Positions 38,101 to 48,207 of a stretch of 64,000 nucleotides of DNA are shown in pieces (position 1 is the stretch's first letter; each line of letters starts with the position of its first letter). Source of the stretch: Dimorphilus gyrociliatus. Lineage: Eukaryota; Animalia; Annelida. Made by a program: the position numbers and the translations under genes. Location of the stretch: NCBI GenBank assembly GCA_904063045.1, contig CAJFCJ010000006.1, forward strand, positions 3,240,408 to 3,304,407, given 5' to 3'. Under the pieces are notes generated by a model. The model saw only the letters and a program-made list of their open reading frames with translations. It had not been told where the DNA came from and searched no databases.

Positions 38101-41100
38101 ATTAATTTGCAACGGTTTTATATAAGAATAATGATTTCTCTTTTTACTAATTATATTTTGAGTAGTGGGTACCAATTGATGTCTAAAATTATAAGATTAA
38201 CGAATTCTACTAATATGGATATTTATATTTTTAATTATATTTATTGACTGCATTTAGTGACGTTATTTCTGCAATAACTGCGTAATATAAATCAGACATT
38301 ACAATTAATCTAGCTTTTTAACAAGTGACATTTATAATCATTTTTTATTTATGTAAAATTACTTTCCTAAGCCTCTCCGTCTATTCTGCGAACAATGGTT
38401 GAGAGACATTCTGATTATACATATTCTGAAAAGCTTCGCATAAGTGTTGGAACTTGGAATGTGAACGGTGGTAAACATTTTAGATCTATTGCTCACAAGC
38501 ATGAATCTATAACTGACTGGCTATTAGATCTACCAAAGTTAACTCGTGAAAGTAGACCAGGTATGCTAAGTACCAGGCACTATCTGATATAACTACCTTA
38601 ATTAAAAAAAATAGAAAGATAAGTTTGTCAATATAAAAATATTGCGCTTTTATAGAACTTCTACGAAACAATATAAACTATGATAGACCTGTTGACATTT
38701 ATGCGATTGGCTTTCAAGAAATTATTGATTTAAATGCAAGTAATATTATGAATGCAAGGTAATGAATGTCTACTGCTTTCTTTATTAAACCTGTTTTTTA
38801 TATTATATATTACGAAAAGTAAAAATAATCTAATTATCTTATTCTAGCACAACAAATCAAAGAGAATGGGGAAAGTATCTTCAAGATATTATTTCAAGAG
38901 ATCACAAATACGTTCTTCTGACATCTATACAATTAGTCGGAGTTTGCCTATATATATTCATTAGACCTAAGCATGCTCCTTTTATCCGGTAATTAATTTC
39001 TTTTACATGAAACAAAAATTAATTATAAAGAGGAAATCTTTCTTTAGTGACGTCGGTGTAGACTCAGTTAAAACTGGTTTAGGAGGAGCCGCTGGCAACA
39101 AAGGAGGAGTTGCAATACGCTTTGTGATGCATCATAATTCCTTTGTTTTTGTTTGTTCACATTTAAGTGCAGGACAATCTCATATGCAAGCTAGAAACCA
39201 AGAATTTCATGAGATTGCCCAGAAACTACATTTTCCAATGGTAAATTTCAATTTACAATATTTCTTTATATTTTTTGCTTACAAAAGAAAGAGTACCATT
39301 TGTTTAAAAAGAAAGTCATATACGTGACATGGAAATTTTAGACTTCCCTCGGGTTTTAATCTGATTGGGAACTGATATACCAGACTATGACTAAGTTAAC
39401 CAGAAACAAGGTTCAATGATCAAGATAAATCGATCTTACAATGAGAATCTGTACAAAAAAATGAACAAGATTTATTTATCGAAGTAGCGTTAATGATCTA
39501 TATGTTCTTTCCAATTGATTTATTTTAATGCAATTTTCTAAAATAAGATGTGCTACGTGTGCTATTGAAGCAATGAGGCAGATAGCGACTGTTGTATAAT
39601 AATTATCCATTATCTCTGTTATTAAAGCCAGTTTTTGTTTATATCTTTTCAGGAACTCTGTAGAGTAAGTGCTGTCGTATAAAAAGATATTGTGCATGCC
39701 ACAGTTCTATGTAGTTTATATTTTTCTACTCACTTTAACTTTTTAGCATGTTAGTTGTAGACTCACTGAGAACGTATATTGCTATTCAAAGAAGTTTGAA
39801 TAACAAGCTAGTAGTGTCGAATTGTAGAACAAGCACAATATAAAGAAAGATGTCACACTTATAGTCTGAGTTTATGAGAGATTTGTGCTCCTTCTAACGA
39901 ATTATATTTTTTGTTATTCTAACAGGGTAGAACCATTAGCTCTCACGATTACATAATATGGTGTGGAGATTTAAATTATAGAATTGATATGCCAAATAGT
40001 GAAGTAAGGGAGGCGATAAAACATGGTGAATACGAAACATTAATGGCAGAAGATCAATTACTCAAACAAAGAAACCTGGGAAGCGTTTTCAAGGGGTTCT
40101 TAGAATTTCCTACAAACTTTGCTCCGACTTACAAATATGATTTATTCTGTAATGATTATGACACCAGTGAAAAAAATCGCATTCCTGCCTGGACCGATCG
40201 TATACTCATTCGAAAAAAACCATGGCCTAAATACATTGGTAAATAGTCTGGATTTTTTTTTATCTTACATTAAAGTTACCGTTTATTTTACAAAGGTGAG
40301 GAATCAGCTGAGCCAAATGAGGGAATCACACAAATGCTTTATAATCGAGCTGAGTTAAAGACGTCTGATCATAGACCAGTGTTGGCTCTCTACGATGTTG
40401 AACTTATCCGTGTGAATAGTGAGAGACGTTTTGACGTCTATGATGAAGTAATATCCCTTCAAGGACCATCGGATGCAACTGTGGTGGTTTTTTATTCGGA
40501 CAATGCTGGAATGGATGATGAAAGCTTCCAAAATATAATACAAGTTATTGGGGCTTCTGGTAATATTATTTTAGTGCGATTCGTGGAACAGAGTACCCTT
40601 ATAACTTTTTCATCGGGTAAAGAAGCCTTGGAAGCTGTCAAAAGTGACGGTTTAAGTATAGGTGGTAGAGAAATGCGTGTAACCTTGAAAACAGGCGATT
40701 GGAAGCAGATTTTACAGAGAGAAATGAAATTAGCAGATATTTGTGATGAACCTGTTGCTGATGAAGCTGAAGAAGTCGAAGATGATGTTCCAGAGTTGAG
40801 CAGTTCTACTGATCGTCGCTCTAAATTTATCAAGAGGTTATCTTTATTAAGAGAAGATTCCAACTTCCCAACTATGTCCTTTGATGTTGACGGTAATATT
40901 TAATTTTTTCTATATTATCTAATTTACAGTGTCTATCAGTCCATTAGTCTAAAAACAGTAATTTAAAGTACATAAAAGATAACAGTTTTCTAACTTATTT
41001 AACTCAAATATTTTATAGTAAATGAAAATCTTATAGACCTCAAATCTCCAAGTAAGAATCATTTAGCTTCTGACAAATCGCTGTTTATCTAACAAATCTC

Positions 41101-42195
41101 CCGCTTCAAAAAATCGTTCACTATTTTACAGTCAGCTTTACTGACCTTTTAAAATTCTCCTGCTATACAAATTTGAAGTTGAAATCAGAATTTCTCAAGA
41201 GTTGGCAGCAATCATGTGAACGGTTTAACACGAATAGAATATAAGTCGGCGAAAATTGATTTGCATAATTTTTTTTTTTACTCCACGATCATTTGGGCGC
41301 TTTGATTTCATTTTCATTGATTTTGAAATTTCATTTTTCAACTTAATGAGTTATCTATTAAATTCTTTATTCAAGTACTATTTAAAAAATTTAACAAATT
41401 TATTTGTTTTTTGATTTAAGGAGTCAAAATTTTATAATTAATATTTACAATAGATGAAGACGAAGAAGCAGTAACAGGAAAATCTAAATCCCGTGAGCCT
41501 AGTCCAAGGCCAGAAGACAACGAAAATCGCCAGAGTTCTGTAAAAGTATGTATTTACTTTTCAAAGAAAACTGATTGGACTAGAAGTAATTTTATTTCCT
41601 TCAGAAACCGGATAAACCGAAGCCTCCGGAGCGACCGGCTGCACCTCCTGCCAGGCCACCTCCCCCTGCTCCAAATCGTCCTGCTCCACCAGTAAATCGA
41701 CCTACATCAGTTCTAATGAGGAATCATCCTACTGGATCAAAGCAGACCATGCAGGTATGATTTCGAGTTATCTAGACATGAGCTATTATTGATATTGTAA
41801 ATTTAAAGGCAAGTCGAATAAGTCAACCTGTTGATGTCGTTCATCGTCATGCTTCTAATCCAGCTGAAATGAAAGAACTTATAAACAGCTTGATGAGTCC
41901 TACAAGTCCGACATCAGCAAATCTCCCAGCTCCAATGCAACCCCAGAAACCATCTCCGCCAGCAACCGATAAATCGACACCAACGACTCCGCCTAAACCA
42001 GCTCCACGATCGGCTAGCTCAAATTCCTTAAGTGAAAAGGCGACTCCAGCTGTTCCACCAAGAAGAGATGTACCTCCTGTCGCGGCACCTAGAAATTCTA
42101 TGTCCCCTGAGGATAGTTCTAATAAAACTGTTCCTCCTGTTCCTGCTAGACCTAATGCACCGCCAGCAGTTCCACCAAGGAACTTTCAAAGTTAG
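35112..42195 (+). CDS. SYNJ1: Synaptojanin (Sac1 domain, inositol 5-phosphatase, RRM-like domain, proline-rich tail)
   Basis: [99 protein letters not shown], and a Pro-rich C-terminus. Confidence 0.96.
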
Positions 42196-42809
42196 AATTC
42201 CATGTTGTGCCATTGAGATAATTAGTAACATTCCATTGCAATAACAGTGTCATATTAAACGGATAAATCAACTTCATGTAAACGCCTGGGCATAGATCAG
42301 AATATAGAAGTATTCAATAGTATGTTTTTACTCAAAGTAGGATTTAACTGACAAAAATTCTATTTATGCTCAGGTAGCTTGCATCCGAATAGTAAATTCG
42401 TACAAAGTGTTAGAAAGTTGATCTATTTCTCTTAGTTGTGCGAATTCTTTATTTTCTAGTCGGATAATGTTCTAGCTAATTATCACAAGAAAAATGTTTA
42501 GAAACTTGCAAAATGTTTAAATAAGGTTGGAAAAGGAAATAAACAATTTTTTTCCAAATAAAGTCGTTACGTAAGTGGTGATATTGTATTTTCCGTCACG
42601 TGACTGAGTTATAAATAACATATAATATTAAATCAATTACTTGAAATTAAATCAAACCATCTTGGAGTAAGAAAGGGTAATCTCATGCAAAAGATATACT
42701 TCACCAGTTGACGGTGAAGTGAGCGATATTTCATTAATATACAATGCCACGAATTCAGGCCTAATTCTTGTTTAGTAAAAAACAGACCACGTCTCTCTGA
42801 TCTGGAGAA

Positions 42810-45229
42810 ATGTTAAAAACAGTCTTCTCAATTCGAACTCATATTGTGAGATCTTCAGATAGAATTTGTAGAAGACGTTTTTCAGCCCATTTTAAGGAAC
42901 AGAATGCATATAATTTGGCTATAAATGATGAACAAAAGGAAAAGTAAGATGTGTTTTTGTTATCAGACACTAAAAATAAGGTATATTTAGTAAAAATGAA
43001 CAATATAAATAACATAACAACCGAAGGACATTATTAATATAACTTTAGAAATTGTTCATTTTATGAACGACTAAATGACTAAACGCTTTTAAGGATACGC
43101 TTATTTCAAAGAATTTATATAAAGAATAAAGCTATACAAGTAATTTTAATCTTTAATATTTCTCAATGAAATAGTCACCGTGTATATAAATATAAATAGT
43201 AATGTGTCCTCAATTGATAATAGTAAAAAAGATCAAAACTAAATTGAATAAACAATTAAATTCATTGCTGAATACACTAAATATAATGTGTACGCAGAAC
43301 AATTTATTGAACACTATTCCAAAAATTAGATCAAATGCTTTATTTAATCCATTGTGTACTGTTTCCCGAACTTTTGTATTTAAAAAACTTGGTTGGTAAA
43401 ATAGAAAATAGCAGTTACGAAAACATTTTGCTCGGAATAAAAACCTGTTTGTCTTAAGTGGAATATAGCTTGTTTTTAAATAATCTATCAATCTAAACAG
43501 ATTAGTTAATAGCTATAAATCAATTGAGGATCAACTGTTCGAAGCCCTGAAAAATGAAAATAATACTATTTCAATACGAAAATTTATTTCAGTAAGTTAT
43601 AATTAAATTAAATTAATTAATTAATCATATATTTTTTTAATTATTAATTAATTAATCTCTTTTTTATAGGCTTTAGAGTCGGCTGGACTTAAAGATGATG
43701 ATCCAAGATTGAAAGAGTGTTTCAAGAAAATATCTGAGTTACAATCTTCAACAAATCCTAAGAAGAGACAATTGTTAAAAAATGGTCTGACAAAGGAGGC
43801 TTTTACAGAATGTGTTAAAGAAAATATCATGTTAATTAGAAGGGTATTTGCAAGTGAACTGGTTATTCCAGAATTTTCTGAATTTATTGATAATGTGGAG
43901 GAAATATATTATAACACAAGAGCTATACGACAAGGAAAGGTTTCAGACTATATACCTCAATTAAAAAAAGTTGATCCCAATATTTGGGGCGTCTCTTTAT
44001 GTACAACTGATGGGCAGAGACACTCTATTGGAGATGCTAAACAGCCATTTTGTTTACAAGCAATAAGTAAACCTCTGAATTATGCAATTGCATTAAACGA
44101 CGTGGGACCTGAAAAAGTCCATCGTTATATTGGTCACGAACCGAGCGGTGAAAGCTCCAATGAAATAAAACTAGGTATAAACAATAAACCTCACAATCCA
44201 ATGATAAATGCTGGTGCCATAGTAAATGTGTCTCTCTTAAAAACTAACATGAGCATCGCTGGAAGATTTGATTACATTACTCAAGAATATAAGAGATTAT
44301 CGGGGAATGGATTTCTAAGCTTTAATAATCCCTCGTTAGTATAGGAGATTTTGAGTGTAAGAGAATATAAAATACATTTATAATGTTCATTTAACAGATT
44401 TCTGTCGGAAAGAGAAACGTCGTATAGAAATTACGCTCTCGGCCATTATCTTAGGGAAAATAAATGTTTCCCCGAGAATATAAATCTCAGTGAAACTCTT
44501 GACTTATACTTTCAGCTTTGTTCCTCTGAAGTAACCTGTGAAAGTGCGTCCATCATTGCCGCTACTTTAGCAAATGCTGGAATTTGTCCTATTACCGGAG
44601 ATAAAATTTTGAGTACAGTCTCAGTTCAAAATACTCTTTCATTAATGCATTCCTGTGGTATGTATGACTACAGTGGACAATGGGCCTTTCATATTGGGCT
44701 TCCTGCCAAAGCTAGTATAGCTGGAGCAATTCTTATTGTTGTCCCTAATGTGATGGGCATAGCTCTATTGTCTCCACGGCTAGATTGCCATGGAAATAGC
44801 GTAAGAGGAGTTGAGTTCTCGAAAGAACTCATAAAGCTTTTTAATTTCCACAACTATGACAGTCTCAACCAAATTGACAGGAAAGCGAATCCTAGAAGAC
44901 ATCATCACGAAAGAAAAGGTCAGCAGACAGTAACCCTACTTTTTGGATCTTATAAAGGAGATGTATCAGCATTAACAAGGCAATATCTATTAGATATAGA
45001 CATGAATCAAGCTGATTACGATGGAAGAACTGCTTTACACATTGCTGCTGCAGAGGGTCATATTGAATGCGTTGAATTTCTAGTTAACATTTGTAAAGTT
45101 GATCTGATGCCCAAAGACAGATGGGGATTTACACCTCTCGATGATGCTATAAAATTCAAGAAATCTGAAGTTAGGAATTTTTTAGAAGCGAAATGTGAAG
45201 AATTAAATTACAGTTTTAGCAATAAGTGA
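42810..45229 (+). CDS. GLS: Glutaminase (GLS-type) homolog with mitochondrial presequence and C-terminal ankyrin repeats; catalytic Ser substituted
   Basis: Exon 1 42810-42943 reads [26 protein letters not shown] (presequence-like). Motifs [41 protein letters not shown] and [16 protein letters not shown]. The nucleophile motif reads QAISK. Confidence 0.9.
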
Positions 45230-45539
45230 AAGATGACCGTTGTTGAATTTAAAAATTAACTATTAGAAGAAAAACTTACAAATAATCTCATAGAAGTTAT
45301 TTTTTTGCTTCTTTCACCTTGTGCCATTTGTTCTGTTTTAAAATGTTTATGAATCTATTTTCTTTGTTATCCTGCTTAAATAATAAAAAGTAGCAATAAA
45401 AACAAATAAAAAAATGAATAAGTTAATGATGGCGGTCGGGATAAACTGGTATTGTTCATCTGGTAGATGGCAGCATTCAAAGTATACCTTTCTGGGCTGG
45501 AACAAAAGTGCTACATTAAAGGAAAGAGTTTCTCTTACA

Positions 45540-46507
45540 ATGTCTGATAGTGACGTAAGAGCTCATCAGAGAGCTGCACGAAGGAAGAAAATTCTCTCAA
45601 ATCCAAAAAGCAGACTTGAAAGAATTGCTAAACCAGGTAATTTCCTAAGAGAACGAGAACATGCTGTAATTTTTTTTATCAGCTTTATTTAGTCTTTTAA
45701 AATCATATCAGTTTCTTTAATTTTTACTAAAGATTTAAAGCCAAATGACTTAACTAACTTGGATGAGGAAGATCTATCATACAAGTTTGGAGAACTTGAG
45801 AATAACGATCCATCCGAGAGTGAGAAGCTACCTCCCTCCACTGCTGAAGAACCGGTTGAAACAGAAAGAGATCAATTTTTATCTTCTCCCATAAGTTCGT
45901 GTATTATTTCATAGCTCTTTTACCTTTTCTAAGAGTATAGATCAAATTATTCCTATTATTTTTAACGCGAAATAAATGCTCTTAACGAAACTTTTTCATT
46001 CTCTTCCTTTAGATGAGCCACTTGTACCAGAAAAATTCGTTAAAGTTGATCATAACGAGGGAATCTATAGGAATTTTGCTATTTTAGTGATTTTAGGAAT
46101 CATTACACGAATACTTTTTTGCACTGGTTTTGGAAATTGCGTTCTTAAGGTGAAATCAGTTTTAATTCTTTCTTAAATCTTATTTATTGAATAAATTTTT
46201 CTATCTAGAATATTTGGGTTCCTTTTATACTAATGCAAATAGCGAAGTATAACTTGAAACGAAAAGAAAAGGTAAATAAATTGTACAACACTTTAAATCA
46301 AAATAAAAACATTCATTTGTTCTTTTTAAGAATGAGCCAGCTGCGGAGAAAGCTTCAGTCTTGGTAGCAGCTTTAATATTGTCTGGTGTAAAGGCTGGAT
46401 GGATAGAAAAATATAAATCGATTTTTACTGTGCTTTCTACTTTAATGAAAGATTTGATTATTTATTTTTTCAGCTTTTGCGTAACACATATAGTGATAAG
46501 TACATAA
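45540..46507 (+). CDS. CAMLG: CAML / GET2 (guided entry of tail-anchored proteins factor)
   Basis: N-terminal QRAARRKKILSNPKSRLERI, three C-terminal TM segments, AALILSG and C-terminal DLIIYFFSF, as recalled for CAML. Confidence 0.8.
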
Positions 46508-46593: not shown

Positions 46594-48207
46594 TTAAAGA
46601 AGATTGCAAAATGAACTCTTGGATTTTGGCTTCTCTACCACAGCTGGCTTTTCCGGCTCAGGAAGTCCTTTTTTTATCATTACGGCATCTTTGTAATAGA
46701 GTATTGAAGCTCCAATATTGTGTTCTTCGTTGCTTTGATTAGGAGCGATAACATTAACTATAAATTTATAATCATCCTCTGTTTTATTTCTAAAGTCAAC
46801 GAAGTCGATGACTTTTGAATTGATATTGCGCCATATTTCTTTGTACCAAGCATCTTTTTGATAATTATCTAAATTTAACAGCTCCGAATTGTCTGGTTCG
46901 AATAAGAATTTATCCATCATATTTAATATATCATCTCCATCATATTCAATTCTTAATTCAAGGCAGACAACCTTGTTTGAACGAATTAAAATATTAGCTA
47001 ATTCACCATGTGTAGTCCTAAAACTTTCTTCGTCATCGGAACTTAGTCGTTCAGCAAAACCCTTTAAGATTGCCACCTCGTCGCGATACTCATTTATCCA
47101 TTTTTCTAGGACATCCTCCAAAAATGGACTTTTATTGTGATCCTCTACAATCTTTTCCAAGTCAGAATTATTGTTCGATCGTCTACTGAGGGGCACAATT
47201 TGTTTACATAGATTGATAAGATCGTCCTTATACTTTTTTACATTTTGTTTGAATTTTCTCAATCTACGATACATGTGCTCAAAATTTTGCGAAATCTCAT
47301 CTTCAAAGATTTCGTCTATGACAGATAAGCAACTGTCTAAGTATGATATCACATTTTCAAGAAAGGTTGTAAAAGCTTCTATATTTAATTTAGGAGCTTC
47401 ATTTCGCAGCTTTGCTGGTAGTGCATCGCCGCTCAAAAACGTTAGAGGAAGTAGATAAACTTCTTGAGGGACAGCTTTCACCTTATTCTCGCCTTCTAAG
47501 AAACTTGGTAAACTCCTGTAAAATTCAATTGCCTCCTCGAATGTTGTTGGATTTGATTCTAGCTGGCAATCGCAGAAAACTTTACATTTGACTTTAGAAA
47601 TTTCGTCAGAGTCTTCAGTCTTCGCCGAACTGCCAACTTTTGCTTTACCGCTATTAGTAAAAGTGTCAATTTCGGCTTTCAATTTACCTTTTATCTCATC
47701 CGTTTCCGATTTACCTGTTGTTTCTTGTTCAAAAACAATAAAAGCTTTCATGCCATAAGTTATACCAACAACAACGTGAGTTGCATAATCTATGTCTAAG
47801 TTTTCCGATCTTTCGATATTTTCAGGACTAGTATGATCTAATAATTGATCAAATCTTGTCGTACTTTTATAACGTAGTGTAACTCTTGCAACTTTTTCGG
47901 ACGTTTGCGTTTCATTCATGTATTTAGCAAACCCGCCAATTTCAGCTAAGCCTAGCATTAGAGATAGTTTCAACTGACCTTTAGCCTCAAGAGCCTCAAT
48001 TTTATTCTGAAAAGAATTCTCCACTTGAACATCAAAATCAGTGTAGGGATGCTCGTTAGTATCAATATCTGAATCAAGTTTCTCTCTCGACCATAGAGTC
48101 AAGCCAGGGACGATAGTATCACTATAAGCATTGTATAGCATACCCAGTTGAAAAGGGCGACCTAAAGCCTGAATAACTTCTGTTCCTTCAATATTACTAT
48201 TCTCCAT
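46594..48207 (-). CDS. Stonustoxin/verrucotoxin-like protein (MACPF/CDC-like N-terminal domain), intronless, ending in CaaX
   Basis: QALGRPFQLGMLY..TIVPGLTLW, ATHVVVGITYG.KAFIVF, CKVFCD, PTTFEEAIEFYRSLP, VPQEVYLLPL and SPF...LEKWI. The C-terminus is KPKSKSSFCNLL*. Confidence 0.85.
   Translation of the reverse strand: MENSNIEGTEVIQALGRPFQLGMLYNAYSDTIVPGLTLWSREKLDSDIDTNEHPYTDFDVQVENSFQNKIEALEAKGQLKLSLMLGLAEIGGFAKYMNETQTSEKVARVTLRYKSTTRFDQLLDHTSPENIERSENLDIDYATHVVVGITYGMKAFIVFEQETTGKSETDEIKGKLKAEIDTFTNSGKAKVGSSAKTEDSDEISKVKCKVFCDCQLESNPTTFEEAIEFYRSLPSFLEGENKVKAVPQEVYLLPLTFLSGDALPAKLRNEAPKLNIEAFTTFLENVISYLDSCLSVIDEIFEDEISQNFEHMYRRLRKFKQNVKKYKDDLINLCKQIVPLSRRSNNNSDLEKIVEDHNKSPFLEDVLEKWINEYRDEVAILKGFAERLSSDDEESFRTTHGELANILIRSNKVVCLELRIEYDGDDILNMMDKFLFEPDNSELLNLDNYQKDAWYKEIWRNINSKVIDFVDFRNKTEDDYKFIVNVIAPNQSNEEHNIGASILYYKDAVMIKKGLPEPEKPAVVEKPKSKSSFCNLL

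What the first reader, a model, noticed from the sequence alone, without database searches (positions are those of the whole stretch)
42810..45229. Candidate pseudo-glutaminase: catalytic Ser to Ala, with co-altered active-site and activation loops
Seen: the nucleophile motif reads CLQ-A-I-S-K (GCA at 44060-44062). Established: glutaminases have S-x-x-K (human GLS Q-S286-C-V-K289, bacterial QSISK) and that Ser is essential. The conserved PAKSGV(A)G motif reads PAKASIAG (44708-44719), and the phosphate-activation loop GLRFNKLF reads GESSNEIK. Other substrate-contact residues ([25 protein letters not shown]), the presequence and the ankyrin repeats are retained with an intact frame. Inference: a catalytically dead, selected paralog acting as a glutamine sensor, scaffold or heterotetramer regulator. 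I know of no described pseudo-glutaminase system.
Basis: partly seen in the sequence, partly recalled or inferred. Interest (0 to 1): 0.8.

Follow-up and report, generated by a model that had tools for sequence, protein, structure and literature searches.

The report
Glutaminase duplicate that lost its catalytic serine
This tiny marine worm has a second, expressed copy of the enzyme glutaminase whose reactive serine is replaced by alanine; the change is real but recent and species-specific, and a normal copy sits elsewhere in the genome.

Summary
The gene is DgyrCDS5011 of the annelid Dimorphilus gyrociliatus: four exons, 573 aa, with EF-hand_14, Glutaminase and ankyrin domains. It reads Q-A-I-S-K where human GLS has Q-S286-C-V-K. 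The GCA codon (44060-44062) is unchanged in genomic contigs and in correctly spliced transcript contigs from two studies.

New facts:
1. The genome also encodes a canonical glutaminase, DgyrCDS3773 (QSVSK, PAKSGVSG).
2. The two are sister paralogs from a duplication inside this annelid lineage.
3. A related species has both genes at syntenic loci. Its ortholog of the odd copy keeps the serine (TCA) but shares F318S and S482A/V484I.

So Ser-to-Ala is a single T>G change specific to D. gyrociliatus. It sits on a paralog already altered at the two residues that position catalytic Tyr466 in human GLS.

All other substrate contacts are intact and dN/dS is far below 1. The D. gyrociliatus copy evolves faster than its canonical partner (Fisher p=0.017).

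Most of the "altered activation loop" is ordinary for annelids; only F318S is paralog-specific.

Best reading: a young, probably inactive glutaminase paralog, either kept for a non-catalytic role or early in decay. I found no paper on glutaminase-family pseudoenzymes, although dyad-less relatives are common in databases. Interest is moderate.

The parts
42744..45437 (+). Extent of the mRNA as seen in one assembled transcript contig: 5' UTR about 66 nt, 3' UTR about 208 nt
   Evidence: run X4 record 12 (1996 nt, all three introns removed, 0 differing letters)
42810..42943 (+). Exon 1: ATG and an Arg-rich N-terminus that resembles a mitochondrial presequence (inferred)
   Evidence: junction 42943>43501 seen in X2, X3, X4
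43501..43591 (+). Exon 2: start of the EF-hand_14-like N-terminal domain
43670..44334 (+). Exon 3: rest of EF-hand_14 plus the N-terminal half of the glutaminase domain (residues 76-297)
44060..44062 (+). GCA = Ala206, at the position of the catalytic nucleophile Ser286 of human GLS; TCA (Ser) in the ortholog of the related species
44156..44158 (+). TCC = Ser238, at the position of activation-loop Phe318 of human GLS; Ser in both species' B copies, Phe in the canonical paralogs
   Evidence: role of F318 from PMC13218152
44398..45229 (+). Exon 4: C-terminal half of the glutaminase domain, ankyrin repeats and the stop codon
44708..44719 (+). AAA GCT AGT ATA = K-A-S-I in place of the K-S-G-V motif (human K481-S482-G483-V484)
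   Evidence: K-A-N-I in the related species' ortholog

Best explanation
DgyrCDS5011 ('GLS-B') is one of two kidney-type glutaminase genes of Dimorphilus gyrociliatus. The pair arose by a duplication within this annelid lineage.

After the duplication the B copy diverged about three times faster than the canonical A copy (DgyrCDS3773). Before the split from a related species it acquired F318S in the activation loop and S482A/V484I in the K-S-G motif. In human GLS these are the two residues that set the position of catalytic Tyr466. B therefore probably became a glutaminase with altered regulation (inferred).

In the D. gyrociliatus lineage alone, a single T>G change (TCA to GCA) then removed the Ser nucleophile. 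By analogy with human S286A and GLS2 S219A, the protein should no longer hydrolyse glutamine by the Ser-Lys-Tyr mechanism (inferred).

The protein is still transcribed, correctly spliced and full length, and it is predicted to fold like human KGA. It keeps every other glutamine-contact residue. It most likely still binds glutamine or glutamate and is kept under weakened purifying selection for a non-catalytic role. Candidate roles are a non-hydrolysing subunit mixed into oligomers with the canonical paralog, or a ligand-binding protein. That last step is inferred, not shown.
For: - Gene model, domains and identity to DgyrCDS5011.
- Ala at the Ser286 position.
- No sequence differences, and exact splicing in contigs of two studies.
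- Canonical paralog DgyrCDS3773 in the same genome.
- A and B are sisters (100/100 support), each with an ortholog in a related species (100/100 and 100/98). Branch lengths: stem B 0.70 against stem A 0.24; terminal branches B_Dg 0.31, B_spR 0.16, A_Dg 0.05, A_spR 0.16.
- Positional orthology: L004 is collinear with window 38.6-48.2 kb; L001 shares its neighbours with L003.
- The ortholog reads QSISK and KANI, with TCA against GCA.
- dN 0.11-0.12 against a saturated dS above 2, so omega is about 0.04-0.11.
- B_Dg-specific replacements are more conservative than the neutral expectation: mean BLOSUM62 +0.26 against -0.44, p about 0.01. There are no stops or frameshifts.
- Structure model: pLDDT 84.7, above 90 in the catalytic core, TM 0.93 to human GAC.
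- Literature: S286A loses activity (PMC4929687, PMC7078194); GLS2 S219A loses activity (PMC8130709). S482 contacts Y466, and S482C is phosphate-independent and insensitive to product inhibition. F318 stacks on Y466, and F318S is inactive (PMC13218152).
Against: - No activity, binding or interaction data exist for this protein.
- The Ser loss is confined to one species and its age is unknown.
- The B_Dg branch is accelerated relative to the canonical copy: polarised changes B 31 and A 5 in D. gyrociliatus against 21 and 15 in the related species, Fisher p=0.017. Its replacements are also more radical than those of B in the related species. Both fit simple relaxation after loss of function.
- dS is saturated, so omega averages over a long history, most of which may precede the Ser loss.
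- Hetero-oligomerisation of A and B (62% identical) is conjecture.
- Mitochondrial targeting is judged by eye only.
Confidence: 0.55

Rival explanations
1. The gene was disabled recently and is on its way to loss. The canonical paralog supplies all glutaminase activity. The Ser-to-Ala change was tolerated, and the gene is intact and expressed only because too little time has passed.
For: - The Ser loss is species-specific; the sister-species ortholog keeps TCA.
- B is accelerated relative to A only in D. gyrociliatus.
- B_Dg departs from 15 of 162 highly conserved columns against 7 for A. Six of these departures (A134V, S206A, W421L, P424R, D461N, A481S) are not shared with the sister-species ortholog.
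- Its replacements are more radical than those of the sister ortholog.
Against: - There is no stop or frameshift and all splice sites are intact. The mRNA is assembled at good depth in three runs.
- All eight other substrate-contact residues are intact.
- Branch-specific replacements are still significantly more conservative than neutral.
- D. gyrociliatus has a compacted genome (PMC7854359). By my inference, dispensable genes would be lost quickly there.
Confidence: 0.27
2. The protein is still an active amidohydrolase. It would use another nucleophile or an activated water, or act on another substrate. In this view F318S/S482A/V484I mark a change of function that made Ser286 dispensable.
For: - K289, Y466 and the whole binding pocket are kept.
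- An independent annelid clade (P0210/P0245) converged on S482A+V484I while keeping Ser286. This suggests those changes are functional tuning, not decay.
- Human S482C remains fully active (PMC13218152).
Against: - Ser286 forms the covalent intermediate, and S286A or S219A mutants lose activity in three independent studies (PMC4929687, PMC7078194, PMC8130709).
- Human F318S is also inactive (PMC13218152).
- No new Ser, Cys or Thr has appeared at a conserved pocket position. The Ser at the 483 position is Asn in the ortholog.
Confidence: 0.13
3. The Ala codon is an assembly or sequencing error, or a rare allele.
For: None found.
Against: A genomic contig and transcript contigs from four runs in two studies (2017 and 2020) show no differing letter over 3.1 kb. 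The NCBI annotation gives the same protein.
Confidence: 0.02

Closest known systems
Human kidney-type glutaminase GLS (KGA/GAC) and GLS2
   Same: Same three-part architecture: EF-hand_14-like N-domain, beta-lactamase-fold glutaminase domain and C-terminal ankyrin repeats. 53% identity, and TM 0.93 to GAC crystal structures. The substrate contacts Y249, Q285, K289, N335, E381, N388, Y414 and Y466 are all present.
   Different: The nucleophile Ser286 is Ala, Phe318 is Ser, and Ser482-Gly483-Val484 is Ala-Ser-Ile. Lys320 and Lys398, the phosphate ligands in human GLS, are Glu and Asn. That last difference is also true of the canonical annelid paralog.
DgyrCDS3773 (CAD5114732.1), the canonical glutaminase of the same animal
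   Same: Sister paralog, 62% identical, with the same domains and an N-terminus that also looks like a presequence.
   Different: It keeps QSVSK, Phe318 and PAKSGVSG, and evolves 3-6 times more slowly. It lies on another contig (CAJFCJ010000005.1) with different neighbours. It lacks the intron that splits exons 3 and 4 of the B copy.
Engineered and disease variants of human GLS: S286A, F318S, S482C
   Same: The same three positions are changed naturally here. S286A and F318S abolish activity, and S482C frees the enzyme from phosphate activation and product inhibition (PMC4929687, PMC7078194, PMC13218152).
   Different: Here all three occur together in a natural, expressed protein. Residue 482 is Ala, not Cys, and the effect of Ala there has not been reported in the papers I could read.
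Pseudoenzyme paralogs that regulate their active relatives (for example plant PDX1.2 in vitamin B6 synthesis, viral pseudo-glutamine-amidotransferases)
   Same: A catalytically disabled duplicate is kept beside an active one, with the ligand pocket retained (PMC6829848 and PMC7605207, found).
   Different: Those belong to unrelated folds, are conserved across clades and have demonstrated partners. This one is confined to one species as far as sampled and has no functional data.

Membership tests
Glutaminase family (Pfam PF04960; serine-dependent beta-lactamase fold) | Sequence match to the family profile above the curated threshold | tested here: met
   PF04960 scores 139.5 and 191.1 bits for the two halves (cut-off 27). 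TIGR03814 scores 275 bits (cut-off 255).
Glutaminase family (Pfam PF04960; serine-dependent beta-lactamase fold) | Ser-x-x-Lys catalytic dyad with the Ser as nucleophile | tested here: not met
   The motif reads A-I-S-K: Lys is kept and Ser is replaced by Ala. The protein is a homolog of the family but should not be filed as an enzyme of EC 3.5.1.2.
Glutaminase family (Pfam PF04960; serine-dependent beta-lactamase fold) | Catalytic Tyr (Y466) and the K-S-G motif | tested here: inconclusive
   Y466 is kept, but K-S-G reads K-A-S. PMC13218152 calls S482 strictly conserved, yet S482C is active, so the effect of Ala is unknown.
Animal kidney-type glutaminase (GLS/GLS2 architecture) | EF-hand_14 N-domain plus glutaminase domain plus C-terminal ankyrin repeats | tested here: met
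   Pfam. The structure model matches near-full-length KGA entries 8gwr and 5uqe.
Animal kidney-type glutaminase (GLS/GLS2 architecture) | Mitochondrial targeting presequence | not testable with these tools
   The N-terminal 30 residues are Arg/Lys-rich with almost no acidic residues. No predictor was available.
Animal kidney-type glutaminase (GLS/GLS2 architecture) | Tetramer or filament assembly, with activation through the activation loop (F318 stacking on Y466) | tested here: not met
   The F318 equivalent is Ser. Assembly itself cannot be tested here.
Pseudoenzyme (selected, catalytically dead paralog) | Loss of an essential catalytic residue in an otherwise intact, expressed protein | tested here: met
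Pseudoenzyme (selected, catalytically dead paralog) | Conservation of the dead state across species under purifying selection | tested here: not met
   The only ortholog found keeps Ser. Omega below 1 is measured over a history that mostly precedes the change.
Pseudoenzyme (selected, catalytically dead paralog) | Demonstrated non-catalytic function or partner | not testable with these tools
   Needs biochemistry or genetics.

The most novel reading that the evidence does not exclude
GLS-B is a natural re-wiring of the glutaminase on-switch. The paired F318S and S482A/V484I changes would have made an ancestral paralog independent of the activation loop. In D. gyrociliatus the same scaffold, with its binding pocket intact, has then been turned into a non-hydrolysing glutamine/glutamate-binding subunit that modulates the canonical enzyme. 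It would be the first animal example of a wider, undescribed class of glutaminase-family pseudoenzymes. That class would also include nematode and ichthyosporean paralogs and the dead second domains of tandem glutaminases in many protists.
Probability: 0.25. Interest if true: 0.65.

Novelty: new variant of a known kind. Interest (0 to 1): 0.45.

Why it matters
Glutaminase is a central enzyme of nitrogen and neurotransmitter metabolism and a cancer drug target. Its regulation through Tyr466 positioning (Phe318, Ser482) was clarified only recently.

This locus offers a natural three-step series within one small clade:
- a canonical enzyme;
- a paralog with F318S and S482A that still has its nucleophile (in the related species);
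- the same paralog without the nucleophile (in D. gyrociliatus).

Comparing the three proteins would test how far the 318/482 pair controls activity. It would also test whether a dead subunit can regulate a live one.

The survey also shows that dyad-less glutaminase homologs are frequent in eukaryotes yet absent from the literature I could search. For genome annotation, DgyrCDS5011 should not be counted as an active glutaminase.

Tried and rejected
- **Second glutaminase in the window:** none, by tblastn of the protein against the 64 kb.
- **Assembly error or allele:** rejected by contigs from four runs in two studies.
- **'The whole activation loop is pseudo-specific':** rejected, because canonical annelid glutaminases read GESFN(E/S)IKL.
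- **'This is the animal's only glutaminase':** considered after two word searches listed no other D. gyrociliatus protein. Rejected when the 90% cluster of P0190 turned out to hold DgyrCDS3773.
- **'Ser483 (K-A-S) is a relocated catalytic Ser':** rejected, because the ortholog has Asn there, and Ser or Ala at 483 also occurs in canonical enzymes.
- **Exact spliced mapping of DgyrCDS3773 onto L003:** failed twice, probably because of a 15-nt micro-exon. I used only the large terminal exon for codon analyses.
- **Codon-rate methods:** YN00 failed with math errors and NG86 dS was undefined for several pairs because synonymous sites are saturated. Omega values are therefore rough.
- **Simple relative-rate test, B_Dg against B_spR:** 31 against 21, not significant (p=0.21).
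- **Brown et al. 2008 on bacterial glutaminase mutagenesis (PMC2735108) and Rumping et al. 2019:** not held.
- **RNA-labelled runs:** a second run search for RNA found none on record. Expression rests on spliced contigs, not raw reads.

Full report
**1. What is at the coordinates**

The window is AT-rich eukaryotic DNA. The finding lies on a four-exon gene on the + strand: exons 42810-42943, 43501-43591, 43670-44334 and 44398-45229, with GT..AG introns of 557, 78 and 63 nt. It encodes 573 aa.

Earlier notes of this scan named the genome as the miniature annelid Dimorphilus gyrociliatus. I confirmed this: my spliced translation is identical, residue for residue, to NCBI protein DgyrCDS5011 [Dimorphilus gyrociliatus] (P0189).

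Pfam finds EF-hand_14, the Glutaminase domain PF04960 and ankyrin repeats. An AlphaFold2 model has mean pLDDT 84.7, with the catalytic core above 90 and the activation-loop region at 57-75. It superposes on human GAC at TM 0.93 and on near-full-length KGA.

**2. The observation**

phmmer against PDB sequences aligns '[10 protein letters not shown]' to human 'fclqScvkpl' at E 1e-66. Ala206 (GCA, 44060-44062) therefore occupies the place of the nucleophile Ser286.

I mapped thirteen landmark positions through a profile alignment. The protein reads Y-Q-A-K-N-E-N-Y-Y-K-A-S-I where canonical enzymes read Y-Q-S-K-N-E-N-Y-Y-K-S-G-V. Only Ser286, Ser482, Gly483 and Val484 differ.

Public contigs laid on 42500-45600 show no differing letter in four runs. 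Transcript contigs in three runs from two studies are spliced at exactly my three junctions. One 1996-nt contig spans 42744-45437. The codon is therefore real, and the mRNA is made and processed. These are assembled contigs, not raw reads, so rare variants cannot be excluded.

**3. A canonical paralog exists**

No second glutaminase lies in the window. Word searches seeded with this protein listed no other D. gyrociliatus entry among the best 120.

They did show one outlier, P0190 (Logan assemblies), at 67% identity. Everything else, from molluscs to mammals, sits at 50-56%. The 90% cluster of P0190 contains DgyrCDS3773 (CAD5114732.1, 589 aa) of D. gyrociliatus.

DgyrCDS3773 reads QSVSK, GESFNEIKL and PAKSGVSG, so it is fully canonical, and it is 62% identical to DgyrCDS5011. 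It lies on contig CAJFCJ010000005.1 between a prefoldin gene and a G-patch/DUF1604 gene (locus L003).

**4. A related species has both genes, and its 'odd' copy keeps the serine**

P0190 itself comes from another organism (runs SRR23372228 and SRR31984834). It is 89.6% identical to DgyrCDS3773, and its contig L001 has the same neighbours as L003.

I then searched with exon 4 alone, because the length filter hides exon-sized ORFs from full-length queries. This found P0366, 83% identical. Its contigs come from the same set of runs.

Contig L004 is collinear with window 38.6-48.2 kb. The upstream inositol-phosphatase-like gene is 84-90% identical, and the downstream stonustoxin-like gene on the minus strand is 78% identical. 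L004 therefore carries the positional ortholog.

Its exon 3 reads PFCIQSISKPL, with the Ser kept (CAG TCA ATT AGT AAA against CAA GCA ATA AGT AAA in the window). Its exon 4 reads GLPAKANIAG.

The nucleophile loss is therefore one T>G transversion on the D. gyrociliatus branch. The S482A, V484I and F318S changes are shared by both species' B copies and absent from both A copies.

**5. Phylogeny and rates**

An IQ-TREE analysis (LG+C20+F+G4, 24 rows) gives these groupings (the same topology appears with 46 rows):
- (B_Dg, B_spR), support 100/100;
- (A_Dg, A_spR), support 100/98;
- A plus B together, support 100/100, nested among annelid glutaminases.

The duplication is therefore specific to this lineage and predates the split of the two species.

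| Branch | Length |
|---|---|
| stem B | 0.70 |
| stem A | 0.24 |
| B_Dg terminal | 0.31 |
| B_spR terminal | 0.16 |
| A_Dg terminal | 0.05 |
| A_spR terminal | 0.16 |

Over 488 shared codons:
- B pair: dN 0.11-0.12, omega roughly 0.04-0.11.
- A pair: dN 0.055-0.067, omega 0.015-0.05.
- Synonymous sites are saturated (dS above 2). The values are rough and average over a long history.

I polarised replacements using the other paralog as outgroup:
- B_Dg 31 against B_spR 21 (not significantly different, p=0.21).
- A_Dg 5 against A_spR 15.
- The B:A ratio differs between the lineages (Fisher p=0.017). B has sped up relative to A specifically in D. gyrociliatus.

The B_Dg-specific replacements have mean BLOSUM62 +0.26. 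They are:
- more radical than those of B_spR (+0.95);
- still more conservative than random single-nucleotide replacements (-0.44, p about 0.01).

There are no stops or frameshifts. B_Dg departs from 15 of 162 highly conserved columns against 7 for the A copy.

Taken together, constraint looks weakened but still present. This fits either a new non-catalytic role or an early stage of decay.

**6. What the changed residues do in characterised enzymes**

- Ser286 forms the covalent adduct with DON. S286A, K289A, Y249A and Y466A strongly reduce activity of the human catalytic domain (PMC4929687).
- GLS1 S286A is used as an enzymatically inactive control (PMC7078194).
- GLS2 S219A loses activity (PMC8130709).
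- A 2026 study (PMC13218152) reports that S482 is strictly conserved in their alignment and contacts the edge of Tyr466.
- In the same study, the disease variant S482C moves Tyr466 into its active position. That makes the enzyme active without phosphate, insensitive to glutamate inhibition and constitutively filamentous.
- The same study reports that Phe318 of the activation loop normally achieves this Tyr466 position by stacking on Tyr466, and that F318S is inactive.

The B paralog has therefore changed exactly the two residues that set Tyr466, and it did so before it lost Ser286.

In the sister species Ser286 has persisted through the long B stem and terminal branch. I take that as a hint (inference) that B remained a working hydrolase with altered regulation, with S482A perhaps offsetting F318S.

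The human phosphate ligands Lys320 and Lys398 are Glu and Asn in both A and B. Mammalian-style phosphate activation therefore cannot be assumed for either paralog.

**7. How unusual is a dyad-less glutaminase?**

The exhaustive profile search returned 150 representatives. Most read QS..K, but a sizeable minority do not.

- **Single-domain proteins:**
  - Panagrolaimus: S to E, K to G.
  - Romanomermis: K to A.
  - Sphaerothecum, an ichthyosporean: S to A, K to M, KSG to KGA.
  - Several unnamed metagenomic or Logan proteins.
- **Tandem two-domain proteins, about 1000-1300 aa:** one domain is canonical and the other degenerate. They occur in Rhodelphis, Andalucia, Aphanomyces and Diphylleia.
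- **Convergent annelid clade:** P0210/P0245 independently has S482A+V484I with Ser286 and Phe318 (Tyr in P0245) kept.

Full-text searches for pseudoenzyme plus glutaminase, and for several phrasings of 'pseudo-' or 'inactive glutaminase', returned only glutamine-amidotransferase, PDX and CPS1 papers. I found no description of a pseudoenzyme in this family. The search covers open-access papers only.

**8. Verdict**

There is indeed a probably dead glutaminase beside a live one, with changes at the KSG motif and at one activation-loop residue. But the dead state is young and known from one species. The accompanying changes are older and coexist with an intact nucleophile in the sister species. 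Most of the 'altered loop' is ordinary for annelids.

My probabilities are:
- 0.55: an inactive, ligand-binding paralog retained for a non-catalytic role;
- about 0.27: a recently disabled gene drifting toward loss;
- about 0.13: residual or altered catalysis;
- about 0.02: an error or allele.

The case is a new variant of a known kind (pseudoenzyme paralogs) in a family where none seems to have been described. Its main value is as a natural mutational series at residues 286, 318 and 482.

Noticed in passing
window 46594-48207 (- strand); ortholog at L004:8335-9954: A stonustoxin-like MACPF gene (Pfam MACPF_SNTX, Stonustoxin_helical, Thioredoxin_11 on the ortholog) lies just downstream. It is 78% identical at protein level between the two species and was already noted by the scan (s1-083415).
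   Followed up: partly
window about 38650-42200 (+ strand); L004:72-3585: The upstream neighbour is an inositol-polyphosphate-phosphatase-like gene (Exo_endo_phos2 plus DUF1866 on the ortholog) ending in a very proline-rich ORF (41869-42195). It is collinear and 84-90% identical in the related species.
   Followed up: partly
P0001, P0003, P0006, P0008, P0013, P0016, P0308 (representatives): Proteins of about 1000-1300 aa with two glutaminase domains in tandem. In most, one domain is canonical and one lacks the Ser/Lys dyad (P0003 of Palpitomonas has both canonical). The named sources are protists: Rhodelphis, Andalucia, Aphanomyces and Diphylleia. These would be built-in pseudo-glutaminase domains, and I found no paper on them.
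   Followed up: partly
P0112, P0123, P0132, P0135, P0147: Proteins of about 610-1080 aa (four of the five are 612-652 aa) with two bare glutaminase domains. The second domain always reads Q-A-x-x-N with His in place of Tyr466 (Y-Q-A-N-N ... H-K-S/T-G-I). The source organisms are unknown (NCBI/Logan, unnamed).
   Followed up: no
P0210 and P0245 clusters (Logan/ENA, 8-9 members each): A separate annelid-like clade of glutaminases on a long stem (0.7) has K-A-G-I instead of K-S-G-V while keeping Ser286 and Phe318 (Tyr in P0245). This is convergent with the S482A+V484I pair of the Dimorphilus B paralog.
   Followed up: partly
L003:4739-6475 against L001:5893-7422: The canonical paralog of D. gyrociliatus has a 15-nt micro-exon (encoding GLEAT) flanked by two short introns. 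In the related species the same residues lie in one uninterrupted reading frame, suggesting intron loss. The canonical copy also lacks the intron that splits exons 3 and 4 of the B copy.
   Followed up: no
P0104 (Panagrolaimus sp. ES5, A0AC34GQ72) and P0073 (Romanomermis culicivorax, A0A915LB80): Nematode kidney-type glutaminase homologs with full architecture but a broken dyad (S to E with K to G, and K to A respectively). They are possible independent pseudo-glutaminases.
   Followed up: no
window 43110-43530: One 421-nt contig of run X2 and a 157-nt contig of X3 lie inside intron 1. They may be unspliced precursor or a separate small transcript.
   Followed up: no
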